The notes under the pieces were generated by a model. That model did no database searches, was not told where the DNA came from, and worked only from the letters and a program-made list of their open reading frames with translations. A program made the translations under genes and the position numbers. DNA of 63,921 bases, filler included, from Octopus bimaculoides (taxonomy: Eukaryota), in NCBI RefSeq assembly GCF_001194135.2. It is 5 parts of 5 records of this genome, joined end to end, with 100 filler letters (N's around TTAATTAATTAA, not from the genome) between each part and the next. Parts side by side here need not be neighbours in the genome. Positions count along the whole stretch, not along the records: positions 56,024 to 63,921 come from NC_068989.1; 4 more parts are not named here. One strand, 5' to 3'. Shown in pieces: positions 55,924 through 63,921 of the stretch (the stretch's first letter is position 1; the number at the start of each line of letters is the position of its first letter).

Positions 55924-56023
55924 NNNNNNNNNNNNNNNNNNNNNNNNNNNNNNNNNNNNNNNNNNNNTTAATTAATTAANNNNNNNNNNNNNNNNNNNNN
56001 NNNNNNNNNNNNNNNNNNNNNNN

Positions 56024-56213
56024 TTTTTTGTCAGGGCTGCAGGTGCAACATCGGCGAGATCGCTTGCGGGGGCCTCAACTGGAACAGCGGCAGCATTTTT
56101 TGCGAGGGCTGCAGGTGCAACATCGGCGAGATCGCTTGCGGGGGCCTCAACTGGAACAGCGGCAGCATTTTTTGTCAGGGCTGAAGGTGCAACATCGACA
56201 GGTTTAGCTTGCA
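56024..56213 (-). CDS. Exon 3 (partial) of a putative secreted Ala/Pro/Val-rich 24-aa-repeat protein
   Basis: Acceptor TATATTTCAG|TG at 56214/56213 is phase-1 compatible with exon 2. Reads (V)QAKPV-DVAPSALTKNAAAVPVEAPASDLA-DVAPAALAKNAAAVPVEAPASDLA-DVAPAALTK. 72-bp repeat period; GC-rich relative to flanks; open into the gap. Confidence 0.8.
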
Positions 56214-56879
56214 CTGAAATATATAATATAGTGGTAATTATGAGACATATTTTTGTGTTTTGCATAAAGTCACAGATATTTTCAAAATTGGTTAGTACAA
56301 CAAAACTGTCAGAAGAGACATGTGGTTTATTGAAAGTAATTATAAATTTCCCAGAATTTTTAACTGATTAAGATGTTTTGAGTTTAATGCAAAACTACTA
56401 GATTTTTGTGGAAAAATTGCGTTTTTGCGAGAAAGAAATGCTTTCTAATATGCTTAAAGATAACTATTATTTGCTGTATGTATTAATAGTTTATTTTGCA
56501 ATTTCATTGAATAAATTTTTAGATCTAATTCTAGCTTAGTAAATGAGATCATATGATTAAATAAATGTAAATACTGTTTCATTACATTTGAAACTATTAT
56601 TAAACATATCGTCTAAAGTAATTTGGATGGTGAGTGAGAAACGGAGTGTCGGATGGTAAATTGCCCACGAAAATGGTCATATTTAGAAACCAGAATGTTC
56701 AGAAGAAACCGACACATATAAACATCTAAACTACAGTACGTATAGTGAAAAAGCAATGATAAAAGCTGTGATGAACAATCAAACTATATTTCGCGACTTT
56801 ACCTATAACAGTTCTGGCAATTCTGAACATTGCCTCCGGAAGCACAATGATTTGATTTCACTTACATCATTATAAAACG

Positions 56880-58030
56880 TGAGACAATAGAATTTCCCAT
56901 CTCTTGACTTACCTACACTGACAATGCAGTATTCTTCAAAATGCCACCCACAACTGTTTATGTGTATTCTCGTGATTTATTTATTGACATAGCAAAGCTT
57001 AGATGTTCTGGTGGAAACTGAAGTTTTCTAAATCGAAATACATCAGTTTGTTTGAGTGGAATGCTGAGCATAATTTGTCTCATCTTTAGGGCATCCAGCA
57101 ATATTGACAGTCGGATACAATGTAGTATAAACTTCTTAACCATTAATCTGGTGCCAATGTATGAGTGCAGTTGATCTAAATTAGATAGCGCCATTGTTGG
57201 AGATCTTTTAGCAGAAGTCTATGCAACTGTAAATCTCAAGCTTCCAATGAGTTTTAGAATTCTACTGCACAGTGAGTTATTTGTTCCTGATGTGCAATAA
57301 TGTCTATTGATTTACAGATACGATTATTTTCTAAAAGCTTCTATAAACGTGGCCAGTTGATGTCATTGATCAAAATTTATTTTCCCCTGCTCAGCCACTA
57401 ATGTGTTAGATAATGAGTTACTGCCTTTAGAGAGACTGGATCTATGACGTCATTACTGATTGTAGAAGATTTTCTTTCTCCAACTGTAAATAAATATTTA
57501 ACAAATAACCAGATAGTTGATCTTCAAAAGATTGGCTCTCATGTTAGGAGACAACTTGAAGCACAGGCGATTAGCGGGAGCACAGAATATTGATCTTAGT
57601 TAAGTTGAGGAAGTCCTATTTTTTCACTTCTTGGCCATTATATATCTTTAAGCTTGTCGATAAGAGTTGCATGGTAGATTTCCTCTGTATTGTCTACTTC
57701 CACATTCGAGTACATCTACTGAGTTTGATGTTTGAAATCTTCGGCAAGGTCATCACTTATTAGAGTTAAAGCCGAGGCAAACTACATGGTTCACAGCGTT
57801 TCAACGGCATCGTGAAAAGAAACCCAAGATTCTTAGCTGCTTGATATATAAAAGTGTTTAACTATGCAGCATCATCTTGGAAAACATTTACCAGAAATCT
57901 CTGCAATGGCTCTCTGTAAATGTATACTCCGCCATTGACTATTCGAACGATGTATATTAGAGCGAAATTGGAGACAGAAACATTCCTGAGGAGTACAATA
58001 TACACTCTTCTGATGGCACTCTCAAAATTT
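56880..58030 (-). mobile_element. Helitron RepHel remnant (linker plus Pif1 helicase), heavily decayed, in intron 2 of the repeat-protein gene
   Basis: Minus frames: IRRVYIVLLRNV...RIVNG...FQDD...LFTMPLKRCEP...IGLP; WLSRGK*IL...CKSID...AVEF*NSLE; GTRL.V...IPL...FRKLQFP...LSFAMSINKS. Confidence 0.75.
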
Positions 58031-58214
58031 ATATCAAATTGGCCACTAACAGGAGCATGTTGCTTTCTTCATCTCCGTTGCTTTCTTCGTGTAAAGTAGG
58101 ATGGGACCTGATGATACAGCAACATTTTTGCGAAGGGATCATATTGAGCCAGCTTTAAAAATACTGCAAGTGTTGTGCCCCTTGGAGTTTGTGCTTGCTG
58201 TTCAGTAGTTGCTA

Positions 58215-58368
58215 AAATGACCCCAGTGTTTGACCGACACTATATTTTATCGACCCCAGAAGGTTAACATCAGTGATATTTTAACTCCGAATGCAAAGTA
58301 CCGGAATAAATACTGCAAAAAATTTTATCGGATGTTCTAACGATTCTGTCAGTCCACTGAAAATCAGT
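58215..58368 (-). mobile_element. SINE family B, degraded
   Basis: TATTTTATCGACCCCAGAAGG...CTAACGATTCTGTCAG is the reverse complement of family B. Confidence 0.65.
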
Positions 58369-58652
58369 GACATTATAACATGGTAGTTCTTTAATTGTAT
58401 GGACACTACTTCGTCGGATTTAATGTTTTAAATAACATTTTAAATAACAATCTTTTGACGTATCTGTGTTATGAGTTCGCATCATGCGGAAGACGATAAA
58501 CTAAACTAAAACCAGAAACACGAAGTAGATTCGATCGCCTATGTCCACCTTACAACACAATACTGATTTACTGCTTATGTAAGAGTTCTGATTTATTTCA
58601 TGAAATTCCAATAAAATCTATAAAATCTAGAGAAAGGTGTATTGGTACTTAC

Positions 58653-58704
58653 CAATTGCAATTATGGAAAGAATGGAAACAAGCAGAGACATATTAGGAG
58701 CCAT
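58653..58704 (-). CDS. Exon 2 coding part: start codon and signal peptide MAPNMSLLVSILSIIAI (exon 58714-58653)
   Basis: Acceptor TTGTTTGTTTTTTTTCGGCAG|G, Kozak-like AGAAATGG (A at -3, G at +4), hydrophobic core, donor G|GTAAGT (phase 1). Splicing to 56213 gives ...IIAIVQA|KP. Confidence 0.8.
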
Positions 58705-59252
58705 TTCTAGTTGCCTGCCGAAAAAAAACAAACAATGATATACATACATGTGTGTGTAAGTGAGTGAGTGAATGAGTGAGTGAGTGAGTGTAGAAGTAAT
58801 GTTTATCGCCACTTCATCATAGCTGTTCCATGTTTAACCCCAGGAGGAGGCCTCTTCCAGCTGGCTATCGATGCAATCTGCACCCGATATGTATTGCAAG
58901 CAGAGGACCGAACTCCTACTATCTTCTACTGACAACCACAGGACTGCCAGACCGTCCTGTTTCGAGCTATTTGTGCTCATCCTCAGTGGTGGACACCAGT
59001 CCGCCAGAGAGAGTAGTAGTTCGTTCCAGCTGGCAATATATAGAAAAATAAGTGACAACCAGCAACTGATCTTGCAACAAACAAAATAGCAAGGTAGAAA
59101 ATCTCTATAAGATATGAAAGTAGTAAATATACTGAGAAGTAAGGTTTATCAGCAGGGGACGTAAATGCACCTGCATCGGTTGTCAAGCGATGTTGGGTAG
59201 GAACAAACATAGACAGACATATTCACACACATACACTTATATGTATATACAT

Positions 59253-59291
<39 letters not shown>

Positions 59292-60449
59292 NNNNNNNNN
59301 NNNNNNNNNNNNNNNNNNNNNNNNNNNNNNNNNNNNNNNNNNNNNNNNNNNNNNNNNNNNNNNNNNNNNNNNNNNNNNNNNNNNNNNNNNNNNNNNNNNN
59401 NNNNNNNNNNNNNNNNNNNNNNNNNNNNNNNNNNNNNNNNNNNNNNNNNNNNNNNNNNNNNNNNNNNNNNNNNNNNNNNNNNNNNNNNNNNNNNNNNNNN
59501 NNNNNNNNNNNNNNNNNNNNNNNNNNNNNNNNNNNNNNNNNNNNNNNNNNNNNNNNNNNNNNNNNNNNNNNNNNNNNNNNNNNNNNNNNNNNNNNNNNNN
59601 NNNNNNNNNNNNNNNNNNNNNNNNNNNNNNNNNNNNNNNNNNNNNNNNNNNNNNNNNNNNNNNNNNNNNNNNNNNNNNNNNNNNNNNNNNNNNNNNNNNN
59701 NNNNNNNNNNNNNNNNNNNNNNNNNNNNNNNNNNNNNNNNNNNNNNNNNNNNNNNNNNNNNNNNNNNNNNNNNNNNNNNNNNNNNNNNNNNNNNNNNNNN
59801 NNNNNNNNNNNNNNNNNNNNNNNNNNNNNNNNNNNNNNNNNNNNNNNNNNNNNNNNNNNNNNNNNNNNNNNNNNNNNNNNNNNNNNNNNNNNNNNNNNNN
59901 NNNNNNNNNNNNNNNNNNNNNNNNNNNNNNNNNNNNNNNNNNNNNNNNNNNNNNNNNNNNNNNNNNNNNNNNNNNNNNNNNNNNNNNNNNNNNNNNNNNN
60001 NNNNNNNNNNNNNNNNNNNNNNNNNNNNNNNNNNATATATATACGTGTGTGTGTGTGTGGATCATATTTCTTTCAAACAGACACACACACACACATACAC
60101 ACACATCTGTTTTGTCTGAGATGCCAACAAGTTTGTTGTCACAGATTGTTTTAAATGAAATTAAATTAAATTAAATTAAATTCCTCAACTTTGTCCCATA
60201 TACTTATCGAATTGGTCGAGTGCGATTGTTACGAATAGGACTGCGGGTCGTTAAATTCACCTTTGATCGTATCAGTTTTTAGTCAGATCAACACTCCCCA
60301 ATGGAGAAAGACCATGTTACTTGGACATCTTCTCTCATGCAAGACCTCACGATTATATAATCAATGAGGTGATAATGGTTGGATCAGGGATGCTTCCATA
60401 TAGTTTTGTGGTGGTTGGAGAGTTGGAAAATAGCATTAGTAATCAAAAT

Positions 60450-61337
60450 TCCATATTCATTGCTAAGCGATTGTTGCAGATGGCCGTTTGAGTTTACCTT
60501 GCCAACCCCATGATTCCTTAATTACGTCACCCAACATGTAGTAAAATTTGAGTGCAGAACCAGTGGTGACTTGTTCAACGAACAGCGCTTCAAAGAAAAA
60601 ACTAAGACTTTGATACAAAACAGTTCGATATTTGCTCTTCGTAGACGATTGTGCACTTGTAGCACACACGTTTGAAGACTAGCGATGGATTCTAACCAAC
60701 AACTCGCGTGCATCGAAGGCTTTCCGTTTGACCATAAGCATCAAGGAAACTGAGTTTGTCCATCAGACCATTCATTACCATCCTCCCTCTGTTGCCCCTA
60801 CTGTGTGTATGGATGGGATAGCGTTAAAATCTTTCCGCCTTCACTTGTCTTGGTTCCATTATGTTCAGTGATACTAAGATAGATAAAGAAATTGAGTCAA
60901 AAATCGAAAAGGCTTAGTTCCACTTTCGGCAAGCTTTATCACAGGCTTTGGAACAGCCCCGACGTATCATTAAAGATGAAAGTCGGTGTGGTATAAGTCG
61001 GCGGTTTTGACATCATTGCTTTACAGTGTTGAATCTTGGACCCAGTACCGAAAGCACATCAACTTGCTTGGCGCTTTTCATACGTGATGCTTGCGTACCG
61101 AGTGACCATATTCGCAACAGTCACCATATTCGTAAGAGTGAGGTAATAACAAAATGCAATATATCAGGTATTGAAGCCAACCTCATCAAAATACAGCTTA
61201 GGTGGTCAGGTTATCTTTCATGTATGAGTGATGTCGGAATTTCAAAGCAACTTCTCTTTGGCCAATTCCTAACAGGTAAGTCAGTTGGAGGGCTACTCTT
61301 GCGTTTCAAAGACATGCTAAAAGTAAATCTAAAGTGA
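60450..61337 (+). mobile_element. RTE/BovB-clade LINE RT and C-terminal fragment, antisense within intron 1
   Basis: GDLFN..RF...LLFVDDCALVAH...AFRLTISIKET...IDKEI...ESWTQYRKHI...IKIQLRWSG...KQLLFG...RFKDMLK; several frameshifts. Confidence 0.85.
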
Positions 61338-61669
61338 TACAATATTCCCTTTTCTCGCAGCGTCGTCTATCCAGACTATAAGATGCAAACATTTCGGAGT
61401 AGTTACCTGCTTTTCAGTCAATGAAACCGGGCGGTGGATCAGTGAGCTGATAAGAGAGACAATCTCTCTTCTGTTTTTCCACTCAACATACGTCGGCTGG
61501 TAGCGCAAATCGACGACTCATCGTAATTAAATAACGGGTGATTGCGCTAAACGGTGATAAGTAAAAATGCAATGTTAATATACCAGTTCGAATTTGCTAA
61601 GAGCACTTCAGACTTGTAAATAAGTCATTCGCCGTGTTTTATCGTGGAGAAAATTTCTCGCTATAAGCG

Positions 61670-61703
<34 letters not shown>

Positions 61704-62337
61704 GTTATGCTGACACAGTGACCTACTACCCGGAGTTTCTCCGATATGTTGCTATTTCCCAGACAGAAATAAACTACACTGCATATTTATGTTCACAAGT
61801 CGTAATATTACTTTTACTCTTTGCAGCATTATCATTATTGTTACACAACTACCTGTTGCATCAATCTCGTATTTTTTAAAAGCGTGATCTCGTACTTTCT
61901 CACGGTTGCTAAAACGTCAAGTGTAAAGTGTTGCACGTTACGATTGCGTCATGTGATTCAATTAATCATTATTGTTACTTGCTTTTTAGTATTCTAACTT
62001 TTTAATAAATAAATTAATTGAAGTAGAGCCTCATAAATTTCGATGTGAAGGTCTTTAGCAAAGTTTCCAATTAGCGCTTATCAAATATTAATTTAAAATA
62101 GCATTTTTACCATTTATAACATAAGTACAGAGTCACAAATCTATTGTAGGGGTTTAAAGCAGTCGATTATGCATTGTACTCGATATTTTGTTAGTAGCTT
62201 AGTTTCTTGATCCTAAACAGTTTCATAATAAATTCACAAAACAGTTGTACGAGAAACACTTTGATGGACTTTGTCCGATGCTCTGTCAAGTCTACCGTCT
62301 AGCTCCTTTTTACCAAAATATAAAAAAGAAAACTTAC

Positions 62338-62422
62338 CTATTTATTCACTGACAGATTAACGTGGAAAATACTGATGCGATGTTGGTGCGGTGTTTCTGG
62401 CGAAGAACAGAAAACGCTGACT
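62338..62422 (-). other. Putative non-coding first exon (85 nt) of the repeat-protein gene
   Basis: Starts at the A of a TCAGT initiator, contains no ATG, and ends in the consensus donor AG|GTAAGT (62338/62337). Confidence 0.6.
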
Positions 62423-62453
62423 GATTTTGTGAAGGAACTCTCCTGTATTTATA
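62420..62453 (-). promoter_or_regulatory. TATA box plus initiator core promoter
   Basis: Minus strand TATAAATA at 62453-62446; its first T is exactly 31 nt upstream of the A in TCAGT (62422). Confidence 0.65.
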
Positions 62454-63329
62454 GGCAGAGACGTGCGTTTAAAATGAATATAGTCTTTTCTAAGGAACTT
62501 TTTGTCCACTATTCACTAAAACGAAAACAAGTGAGCTACTGAAAAGACAATCCCTTTCTTTGTTCTTAAACTGGAGAAATTATATGTAGGACGGTGGAAT
62601 TGTTTTTAAACTAAAGAAATATGTAGGATGGTAGAAAATAAAATCACAATAGATGCAGGAACTAAAGGAGTGACAAAAATTTTAGAAAAGACATAGGTAA
62701 TTTAAAATAAAACCCTTATAAATGCAGCGGCAAAAGGTAGGGCAAAGTCTCCTGTACAATGTTCTCATGTTCTATGTATTTTACAATGTTTTGATTCACA
62801 CGATCTATTGTAAACGTTATTTCACCTTTCAAATTATACGGCCTTGACGTTGAATGATACAACGTCACTTTTCTAAACTACAACCTTCAATAGTAAATGT
62901 AAGAAAACCCGGAATTTATTTATATTTTAAAAAATAATGATTTCGCTTTCTGTCTAACCGGTGATTAACAGTAAGTCCTCAAACCAACACAAAGATCCTC
63001 CTTCATACTTATTTTTTTAAAAACAGGAACTTTTATGTAAACTACGGAGGTGGTATAGATATCACGTTGATATACATGTGTGTATTTTACCGGCCCAAGT
63101 TGTCAGATTATTGAACTTCCAAAATGGTAGCTCAATGGTTCGTACCCCGTCATCGGCACTATATTTTGTACTTAATCAAAATATCTTAATTTATGTTGGC
63201 CATTTTAATAAAGTTGGATATAGGTACCTAGTGGGGTTGTTATTACTGTCGTTGCTTTTAAGCCAGAATCAATTCTGATAAAGCAGAACTATGAACAAAC
63301 CAATTTTAAAACAACCAGGAAGGAAATAA

Positions 63330-63921
63330 GCTATGTAGTATGAAATTTGCTTACCAACCACAGTATTCTGGGTTCAGTTACACAGCTTGACGCCTTGAGC
63401 AAGTGTCTCCTATAACAACCCGGACCGACTAAAGCCCTTGTGAGTAGATTTGGTAGGCAAAAACTGCAAAAAAAAAGAGACCTGTCGTATATGTGTGTAC
63501 CTTTCTTTTTGCGTTTGACCCCACCACATTTCAGAACTTGTGTTTGGCCCCTACTCCAAATTTCAGGCTTCGTGCCTTTAGTAGAAAGGATTATTATTAT
63601 TATTATTTATATGGAGACTAGGTGGCGAACTGGCAGAACCGTTAGCATTCCGGTATTCTGTCTGTAAGGCTGACTTTGCCTTCTATTTTTAATCGTTCCC
63701 AAGGCATCTCATTATGGAAAGTGTTTCTTTTTTCAATCTCACATTCTGTTTATCTCTATTTTCAGATCTTTGTATTTGGGTAGTTCTTTCATTTCATTTA
63801 AAGATTTAATACCATCTTTGATATTGGTATAAAGGATACATTAATCATCATCATCATCATCATTATTAAGGCGGCGAGCAGACAGAATCGTTAGCACGCC
63901 GGTATTCTGTCTGTAAGGCTG
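63330..63921 (+). mobile_element. Cluster of degraded SINEs: family A remnant and family B pieces
   Basis: GGTTCAGT...CCTTGAGCAAGTGTCT (family A); GGCG(A/G)...CAGAA.CGTTAGCA and ...GTAGAAAGGATTATT (family B). Confidence 0.65.

What the first reader, a model, noticed from the sequence alone, without database searches (positions are those of the whole stretch)
56024..62453. Hidden three-exon gene for an unrecognised secreted repeat protein
Independent signals line up on the minus strand: TATAAATA at -31 and a TCAGT initiator; an 85-nt ATG-free exon 1 ending AG|GTAAGT; exon 2 with a strong acceptor, a Kozak ATG (58704, with an in-frame TGA upstream in the spliced UTR) and a phase-1 GTAAGT donor; and a TTTCAG acceptor at 56214 that restores the frame. 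The product is MAPNMSLLVSILSIIAIVQA|KPVDVAPSALTKNAAAVPVEAPASDLADVAPAALAKN..., a 20-aa signal peptide with a V-x-A cleavage site. A TATA promoter, a signal exon and a repeat exon are typical of tissue-specific, highly expressed secreted proteins. It does not resemble reflectins, suckerins or His-rich beak proteins as I know them.
Basis: partly seen in the sequence, partly recalled or inferred. Interest (0 to 1): 0.85.

Follow-up and report, generated by a model that had tools for sequence, protein, structure and literature searches.

The report
Annotated octopus gene, small secreted repeat protein

Summary
These are the TATA box, the initiator, the ATG-free exon 1, both GTAAGT donors, both acceptors and the restored reading frame.

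The assembly gap (59292-60034) lies wholly inside intron 1. It sits between dinucleotide microsatellites and touches no coding sequence. It only leaves the link between exon 1 and exon 2 dependent on the scaffold being right.

The spliced 80-residue product matches RefSeq XP_052826398.1 at 100% identity over its full length. That entry is [quoted passage not shown], 98 aa. So the gene is not hidden. An independent annotation uses the same start codon and the same coding splice junction.

The full product has:
- a 20-residue signal peptide;
- three 24-residue repeats rich in Ala, Pro and Val;
- a C-terminal NPTKRL.

The "IF-2-like" name is a low-complexity artefact, because no IF-2 domain is detected. 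Searches of 1.84 billion and 5.8 billion proteins find no relative, and no paper mentions the protein. It is an uncharacterised orphan whose mature part is predicted to lack a stable fold.

Function, expression and exon 1 could not be tested here.

The parts
62446..62453 (-). TATAAATA, candidate TATA box 31 nt upstream of the proposed start site
   Evidence: Three copies on this strand against 0.41 expected, so the motif alone is weak. Its position relative to the initiator and exon 1 is what counts. Not experimentally verified.
62420..62424 (-). TCAGT initiator-like motif; proposed transcription start at the A, 62422
   Evidence: TCAGT occurs 16 times on this strand, so it is informative only in combination. 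Inferred.
62338..62422 (-). Proposed exon 1: 85-nt non-coding leader with no ATG, ending TAG|GTAAGT
   Evidence: It contains the in-frame TGA of the spliced leader. Prediction only. It is separated from exon 2 by an intron that holds the assembly gap.
58715..62337 (-). Intron 1: 3623 nt as assembled, including the 743-N gap at 59292-60034 flanked by TG/CA/TA microsatellites, and a degraded LINE-like remnant on the + strand
58653..58714 (-). Exon 2: 10 nt of leader, the ATG at 58704-58702 and 17 codons plus 1 nt (MAPNMSLLVSILSIIAI + G); donor TTG|GTAAGT in phase 1
   Evidence: The start and junction match XP_052826398.1.
56214..58652 (-). Intron 2: 2439 nt, 34% G+C, with a degraded Helitron-like helicase remnant at about 56961-57218
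56024..56213 (-). Exon 3, cut by the piece edge: end of the signal peptide (VQA, to 56206), then KPV and the 24-residue repeats
   Evidence: 56.8% G+C. Identical to residues 18-80 of XP_052826398.1. 18 more codons and the stop lie beyond the edge.
56024..56197 (-). Tandem array of a 72-nt (24-codon) unit, 2.4 copies visible, 95% matches; units at 56196-56125, 56124-56053 and 56052-56024 (cut)

Best explanation
This is a genuine spliced protein-coding gene of Octopus bimaculoides. RefSeq already lists it as XP_052826398.1, 'translation initiation factor IF-2-like isoform X2'.

Shown here:
- Exon 2 supplies the start codon and 17 residues of a signal peptide. A phase-1 GT-AG intron of 2.4 kb joins it to a G+C-rich exon.
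- That exon completes the signal peptide (...IAIVQA|KPV) and encodes three tandem 24-residue units, DVAP(A/S)AL(T/A)KNAAAVPVEAPAS(DLA/NPT), followed by KRL.
- The units differ at only a few bases, which points to recent tandem duplication of a 72-nt unit.

Inferred:
- A TATA/initiator promoter at 62453/62422 drives an 85-nt non-coding first exon.
- The precursor enters the secretory pathway and is cleaved after Ala20.
- The product is released as a 7.5-kDa peptide with 33% Ala, 14% Pro, 13% Val, a mild negative charge and no Cys, Gly or aromatic residues. It has no stable fold.
- Such a peptide would act outside the cell as an extended matrix, coating or spacer-type component, not as an enzyme or a folded ligand.

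It is not a translation factor. It has no detectable relative, so it appears restricted to this lineage.
For: - Sequence features verified at the stated coordinates.
- The spliced product matches a 98-aa RefSeq protein of O. bimaculoides at 100% identity and 100% coverage.
- An 'isoform X2' label implies more than one transcript model. From my knowledge of NCBI's pipeline, alternative isoforms are reported only with transcript support.
- The combined promoter and exon-1 signals arose in 0 of 2000 shuffles, and exon 3 is 56.8% G+C against 34% in intron 2.
- Signal-peptide anatomy: a short n-region without charged residues (MAPNM), a 12-residue hydrophobic core with mean Kyte-Doolittle hydropathy 2.75, and Val at -3 and Ala at -1.
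- In the AlphaFold2 model the only substantial helix is residues 4-18. The rest is coil at pLDDT about 45-50.
- Composition of the mature peptide.
- No Pfam family, no IF-2 model in NCBIfam, and only a chance-level TonB match in the PDB.
- No relatives in 1.84 billion representatives or 5.8 billion clusters.
Against: - XP_ records are computational models. I could not see any RNA-seq or cDNA data here.
- Isoform X1 could not be retrieved, and the gene's locus is not on record under X2.
- With no homologue there is no conservation or purifying-selection evidence that the peptide is made or functional.
- Five of six frames are open across the repeat.
- Exon 1 and the promoter are motif-based only, and they lie across an assembly gap from exon 2.
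- The charge-hydropathy plot places the mature peptide on the 'ordered' side (H 0.53 against a boundary of 0.42) because it is Ala/Val-rich. The disorder call therefore rests on Pro spacing and on a single-sequence AlphaFold2 model, which is weak evidence.
- The extracellular structural role is inference from composition only.
Confidence: 0.8

Rival explanations
1. The gene model is an annotation artefact. A G+C-rich 72-nt minisatellite happens to be open in frame and lies downstream of chance splice and start signals. Any transcript is non-coding, or no stable protein is made.
For: Five of six frames are open across the repeat. No homologue exists anywhere. No literature mentions it. The XP_ entry is a predicted model. 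The protein is absent from all other sources in the collection.
Against: A start codon in good context, a signal-peptide-like exon, a consensus phase-1 donor and an acceptor that restores exactly the repeat's frame are unlikely to coincide by chance. The promoter and exon-1 combination arose in 0 of 2000 shuffles.
Confidence: 0.1
2. The coding region can also, or instead, be read unspliced from the ATG at 56265 inside intron 2. That start is in frame with exon 3 and gives MQNTKICLIITTILYISVQA|KPV..., which is also signal-peptide-like. This would be an alternative internal promoter or isoform.
For: ORF 55972-56265. Its hydrophobic core has mean hydropathy 2.43 and the same VQA cleavage motif. 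RefSeq has a further isoform that I could not see.
Against: The start context is poor (TTTATGC, with T at -3). The core holds two Thr and a Tyr. There is no TATA or initiator pairing upstream. Any protein containing the 78-residue mature part should have been found, and only the spliced form was. The RefSeq form uses the spliced start.
Confidence: 0.07
3. It is a precursor of a processed peptide (hormone, pheromone or neuropeptide-like). It would be cleaved at the C-terminal Lys-Arg, and possibly elsewhere, rather than acting as a structural or coating protein.
For: Signal peptide, small size, and a dibasic KR two residues from the C-terminus.
Against: There is only one dibasic site, at the very end. 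There is no Gly for amidation and no Cys. The repeats are not separated by cleavage sites, so processing would merely trim three residues. No similarity to any known precursor.
Confidence: 0.07
4. It is what its RefSeq name says: a relative of translation initiation factor IF-2.
For: Only the database name.
Against: It is 98 aa with a signal peptide. Pfam gives no hit at all at E<=10, so none of the families I expect in IF-2 (its GTPase, IF-2 and IF2_N domains) is matched. NCBIfam returns only two chance-level hits far below cutoff. No IF-2 appears among hits in two exhaustive searches. The name reflects Ala/Pro-rich low complexity.
Confidence: 0.005

Closest known systems
RefSeq XP_052826398.1, 'translation initiation factor IF-2-like isoform X2' [Octopus bimaculoides]
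   Same: Identical over all 80 residues encoded in the piece, including the start codon and the exon 2/exon 3 junction. It is the same gene.
   Different: Nothing in the coding part. The RefSeq protein continues for 18 residues beyond the piece edge (NAAAVPVEAPASNPTKRL). Its name does not describe it.
Bacterial translation initiation factor IF-2 (source of the name)
   Same: Some IF-2 proteins have an Ala/Pro/Glu-rich low-complexity N-terminal region (my own knowledge). That composition resembles the repeats.
   Different: No GTPase or IF-2 domain. It is roughly a tenth of the length (my own knowledge of IF-2 size), is secreted and is encoded by a spliced animal gene. Not a member.
Proline-rich extended spacers such as the TonB periplasmic linker
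   Same: The only PDB sequence match is TonB (1xx3, E = 1.2). It is driven by alternating Pro/Ala/Val/Glu/Lys. It suggests a similar extended, non-globular physical character.
   Different: The match is at chance level. There is no homology and no shared context.
Ala-rich, Pro-flanked modules of structural proteins: suckerin M1 modules, arthropod cuticle AAP(A/V) repeats, elastin Lys-Ala cross-linking domains (from memory; a lead, not a test)
   Same: Short Ala-rich stretches bounded by Pro (P-AALTKNAAAV-P), one Lys per unit, a secreted product and tandem repeats.
   Different: It lacks the Gly/Tyr/His modules of suckerins. Pfam finds no domain, so no chitin-binding domain. It also lacks the VPGVG-type units of elastin. 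It has only three units and no sequence match to any of these.

Membership tests
Translation initiation factor IF-2 | Translational GTPase domain and IF-2 C-terminal domains | tested here: not met
   Pfam returned 0 families at E<=10. NCBIfam returned only two chance-level hits (E 0.2 and 4.7), far below cutoff and neither an IF-2 model.
Translation initiation factor IF-2 | Cytoplasmic protein several hundred residues long (my own knowledge) | tested here: not met
   98 aa with an N-terminal signal peptide.
Classical secretory proteins (cleavable N-terminal signal peptide) | Short n-region, hydrophobic core of 7-15 residues, and small uncharged residues at -3 and -1 before the cleavage site | tested here: met
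   MAPNM / SLLVSILSIIAI / VQA|K. Core hydropathy 2.75, Val at -3, Ala at -1. Residues 4-18 are helical in the model. This is a heuristic test. SignalP was not available, and secretion itself is untested.
Reflectins | Repeated Met-rich reflectin motifs; composition rich in Met, Tyr, Arg, Asp (my own knowledge) | tested here: not met
   The mature peptide has no Met, no Tyr and one Arg. No reflectin appears among the search hits.
Suckerins | Alternating Ala/His/Thr-rich and Gly/Tyr-rich modules (my own knowledge) | tested here: not met
   Gly, Tyr and His are all absent.
His-rich beak proteins | High His and Gly content (my own knowledge) | tested here: not met
   His and Gly are absent.
Mucin-like secreted repeat proteins | Pro/Thr/Ser-dominated repeats that carry dense O-glycans (my own knowledge) | tested here: not met
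   Ser plus Thr make up only 9% of the mature peptide, while Ala is 33%. Glycosylation itself cannot be tested here.
Spliced animal protein-coding gene with transcript support | Junction-spanning cDNA or RNA-seq reads | not testable with these tools
   No cephalopod transcript data is reachable. The only indirect support is the identical RefSeq model and the existence of an isoform label.

The most novel reading that the evidence does not exclude
The gene is a young, octopus-lineage-restricted gene. In this reading a 72-nt minisatellite became coding by being spliced behind a signal-peptide exon. Its product would be a new class of small Ala/Pro/Val-rich extracellular protein used in an octopus-specific secreted material such as a sucker or gut cuticle, egg coating, mucus or an elastic matrix. 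The total absence of relatives among 1.84 billion representative proteins is compatible with this. It is equally compatible with fast-evolving low complexity or with missing annotation in other cephalopods.
Probability: 0.15. Interest if true: 0.45.

Novelty: already known. Interest (0 to 1): 0.18.

Why it matters
It matters little as a discovery, because the gene model is already public. Two small points have value.

- The RefSeq name "translation initiation factor IF-2-like" is wrong and could mislead functional enrichment or proteomic tables. "Uncharacterised secreted Ala/Pro-rich repeat protein" would be accurate.
- The gene is an example of a lineage-restricted secreted repeat protein in a cephalopod with no detectable relatives. 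Such genes are candidates for taxon-specific extracellular materials, and a tissue-expression look-up would be cheap.

As a check on method, the tool-free reader reconstructed the coding exon structure exactly.

Tried and rejected
- Stop-masked translations of the intron regions gave no Pfam family. The LINE-like remnant gave nothing in the PDB. The Helitron-like remnant gave only Helraiser at E = 0.53. These transposon assignments therefore remain motif-level leads.
- The look-up of encoding contigs for XP_052826398.1 reported no gene on record under this isoform. I could not fetch the full locus, its neighbours or the annotated gene range that would have tested exon 1.
- Isoform X1 did not appear in either protein search, even at E<=10.
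- The two weak hits of the exhaustive search were rejected as repeat-against-repeat noise. They are P0002, a 1203-aa Cys-rich multi-repeat protein containing DNADVSPASLKN, and P0003.
- Rfam hits to mir-297, mir-466 and others next to the gap score 21-36 bits against gathering scores of 70-90. They are TG/CA microsatellite artefacts.
- No tRNA genes were found.
- Four literature searches (by name, accession, peptide strings and octopus arterial elastomer) found nothing. A fifth, general search on secreted repeat proteins in O. bimaculoides listed 32 papers, none of which I opened.
- The bacterial promoter and terminator scanner was not used, because it does not apply to an animal gene.
Full report
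**Observation.**
- TATAAATA lies at 62453-62446.
- TCAGT follows, with its A at 62422.
- Exon 1 is 85 nt (62422-62338), has no ATG and ends TAG|GTAAGT.
- Exon 2 (58714-58653) sits behind a long pyrimidine tract, TTGTTTGTTTTTTTTCGGCAG.
- The ATG is at 58704 in the context GAAATGG.
- An in-frame TGA lies in the spliced leader.
- The exon 2 donor is TTG|GTAAGT in phase 1.
- The acceptor TATATTTCAG| sits before 56213 and restores the frame.

The translation is MAPNMSLLVSILSIIAIVQAKPVDVAPSALTKNAAAVPVEAPASDLADVAPAALAKNAAAVPVEAPASDLADVAPAALTK. It is then cut by the edge of the piece.

**Chance.** In 2000 first-order Markov shuffles of the strand, the expected counts per strand are 0.41 for TATAAATA (3 seen) and 0.33 for GGTAAGT (3 seen). 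The combination of TATA, initiator, ATG-free exon and GGTAAGT never arose. Exon 3 is 56.8% G+C against 34% for intron 2. One caution applies: five of six frames are open across the repeat, so the open frame there is not evidence by itself.

**The gap.** The N run at 59292-60034 lies entirely inside the proposed intron 1 (58715-62337). The whole visible coding sequence (58704-56024) is on one side of it, so continuity of frame across the gap does not matter for the protein.
- Both flanks are TG/CA/TA dinucleotide microsatellites. This is the usual reason for such a gap and is compatible with continuity, but it does not prove it.
- What depends on the scaffold being right is only the link between the non-coding exon 1 and exon 2.
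- The long ORFs and the 397-nt 'inverted repeats' spanning the gap are artefacts of the N run.
- The weak mir-297 and mir-466 matches beside it are microsatellite artefacts far below the gathering scores.

**What it is.** A search of 5.8 billion protein clusters with the 80-residue product returned one hit. It has 100% identity over 100% of the query and is a 98-aa protein that NCBI and UniRef call 'translation initiation factor IF-2-like isoform X2 [Octopus bimaculoides]', XP_052826398.1, seen on a 96.9-Mb contig. Its sequence adds NAAAVPVEAPASNPTKRL beyond the piece edge.

So the window is O. bimaculoides, and the gene is already annotated with the same start codon. Only the junction 58653|56213 gives ...IAI-V-QAKP under the GT-AG rule, so the coding splice is the same too. 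The 'isoform X2' label means NCBI models more than one transcript. From my knowledge of that pipeline this normally requires transcript evidence, but I could not see that evidence. Isoform X1 did not appear in any search, and the locus is not on record under X2. I therefore could not read the annotated gene range to test exon 1.

**The product.** It has three parts:
- a 20-residue signal peptide: n-region MAPNM, hydrophobic core SLLVSILSIIAI with mean hydropathy 2.75, Val at -3 and Ala at -1;
- then KPV and three tandem 24-residue units: DVAPSALTKNAAAVPVEAPASDLA, DVAPAALAKNAAAVPVEAPASDLA and DVAPAALTKNAAAVPVEAPASNPT;
- then KRL.

The mature peptide is 78 residues and 7.5 kDa. It is 33% Ala, 14% Pro and 13% Val, with net charge -2. 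It has no Cys, Phe, Gly, His, Ile, Met, Gln, Trp or Tyr. At the DNA level the 72-nt units match at 95-97%, which points to recent tandem duplication. A single-sequence AlphaFold2 model has mean pLDDT 50. Its only substantial helix is the signal peptide, and the rest is coil. This is weak evidence, but it fits a peptide with Pro every 2-10 residues that has no stable fold.

**What it is not.**
- Pfam finds nothing at E<=10.
- NCBIfam gives only two chance-level hits far below cutoff, neither an IF-2 model.
- The PDB gives only TonB's proline-rich region at E = 1.2.

The name 'IF-2-like' is therefore a low-complexity artefact.

**Relatives.**
- An exhaustive phmmer search against 1.84 billion representatives found only the protein itself. 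It also found two repeat-against-repeat chance hits at E about 5e-5, a Cys-rich multi-repeat protein and another repeat protein.
- The word-indexed search at E<=10 found only the protein itself.
- No paper mentions the name with octopus, the accession or the peptide strings.

It is an uncharacterised orphan as far as public protein sets go. I could not search other cephalopod genomes at the DNA level, so 'lineage-restricted' is provisional.

**How it most likely works.**
- Shown: the coding structure, the repeat architecture, the signal-peptide anatomy and the lack of any known domain.
- Inferred: transcription from the TATA/initiator promoter, entry into the ER with cleavage after Ala20, and secretion of a small, mildly acidic, extended Ala/Pro/Val-rich peptide. 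Such a peptide would serve as an extracellular matrix, coating or spacer-type component.

I hold the gene and secreted-repeat-protein part at about 0.8. The specific extracellular role is much less certain.

**Rivals.**
- A non-coding or artefactual model, about 0.1.
- An unspliced start at ATG 56265, about 0.07. It also gives a signal-like N-terminus, MQNTKICLIITTILYISVQA, but it has a poor start context and no supporting database entry.
- A processed peptide precursor using the terminal KR, about 0.07.
- A true IF-2 relative, effectively excluded.

**Verdict.** The claim that the gene is hidden or unrecognised is not: the model is public, though misnamed and uncharacterised. Novelty: already known. 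Interest is low.

Noticed in passing
window 56205-56265, minus strand: An ATG at 56265 inside intron 2 is in frame with exon 3. Read unspliced, it gives a second signal-peptide-like N-terminus (MQNTKICLIITTILYISVQA|KPV). It shares the VQA cleavage motif, and its start context is poor (TTTATGC).
   Followed up: partly
window about 60560-61334, plus strand (inside intron 1): Frame-shifted, stop-riddled remnant that looks like the C-terminal part of a LINE reverse transcriptase (…LLFVDDCALVAHT…, …AFRLTISIKETEFVHQ…, …LRWSGYLSCMSDVGISKQLLFGQFLTGKSVGG…RFKDMLK…). I recognised it from memory of LINE ORF2 tails. Pfam and the PDB gave no hit.
   Followed up: partly
window 56961-57218, minus strand (inside intron 2), perhaps extending to about 58240: Degraded Helitron-like helicase remnant (…FRFRKLQFPPEHLSFAMSINKSREYT). 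The only PDB match is the Helraiser transposase, residues 1353-1441, at E = 0.53. Pfam gave nothing.
   Followed up: partly
window 63620-63672 and 63869-63921: Two copies, 87% identical and 249 nt apart, of a 53-nt element (minus strand CAGCCTTACAGACAGAATACCGG..GCTAACG.TTCTG…). On the minus strand a trinucleotide microsatellite lies downstream of each: GAT repeats directly after one copy, AAT repeats 14 nt after the other. They look like ends of a dispersed SINE-like repeat. The second copy is cut by the piece edge.
   Followed up: no
window about 62567-62637, minus strand: Imperfect tandem duplication of about 34 nt (TTCTACCATCCTACATATTTCTTTAGTTTAA / TTCCACCGTCCTACATATAATTTCTCCAGTTTAA), about 150-210 nt upstream of the proposed start site. 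It might be a duplicated regulatory element or just AT-rich slippage.
   Followed up: no
window 59204-59291 and 60035-60113: The assembly gap is flanked by (AC)n on one side and by (AT)n(GT)n followed by (AC)n on the other (plus strand). This switch of strand sense in the dinucleotide repeat could explain why the assembly failed here. The N run itself produces spurious long ORFs, 397-nt 'inverted repeats' and weak mir-297/mir-466 matches.
   Followed up: yes
window 56024-56197: The 72-nt coding repeat has a faint 36-nt half-period (about 60% identity between halves). The 24-residue unit may therefore derive from an older 12-residue unit (DVAPAALTKNAA / AVPVEAPASDLA).
   Followed up: no
window 58759-58790: A (CACT)n/(AGTG)n tetranucleotide microsatellite of 8 copies lies about 45-75 nt upstream of the exon 2 acceptor, inside intron 1.
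   Followed up: no
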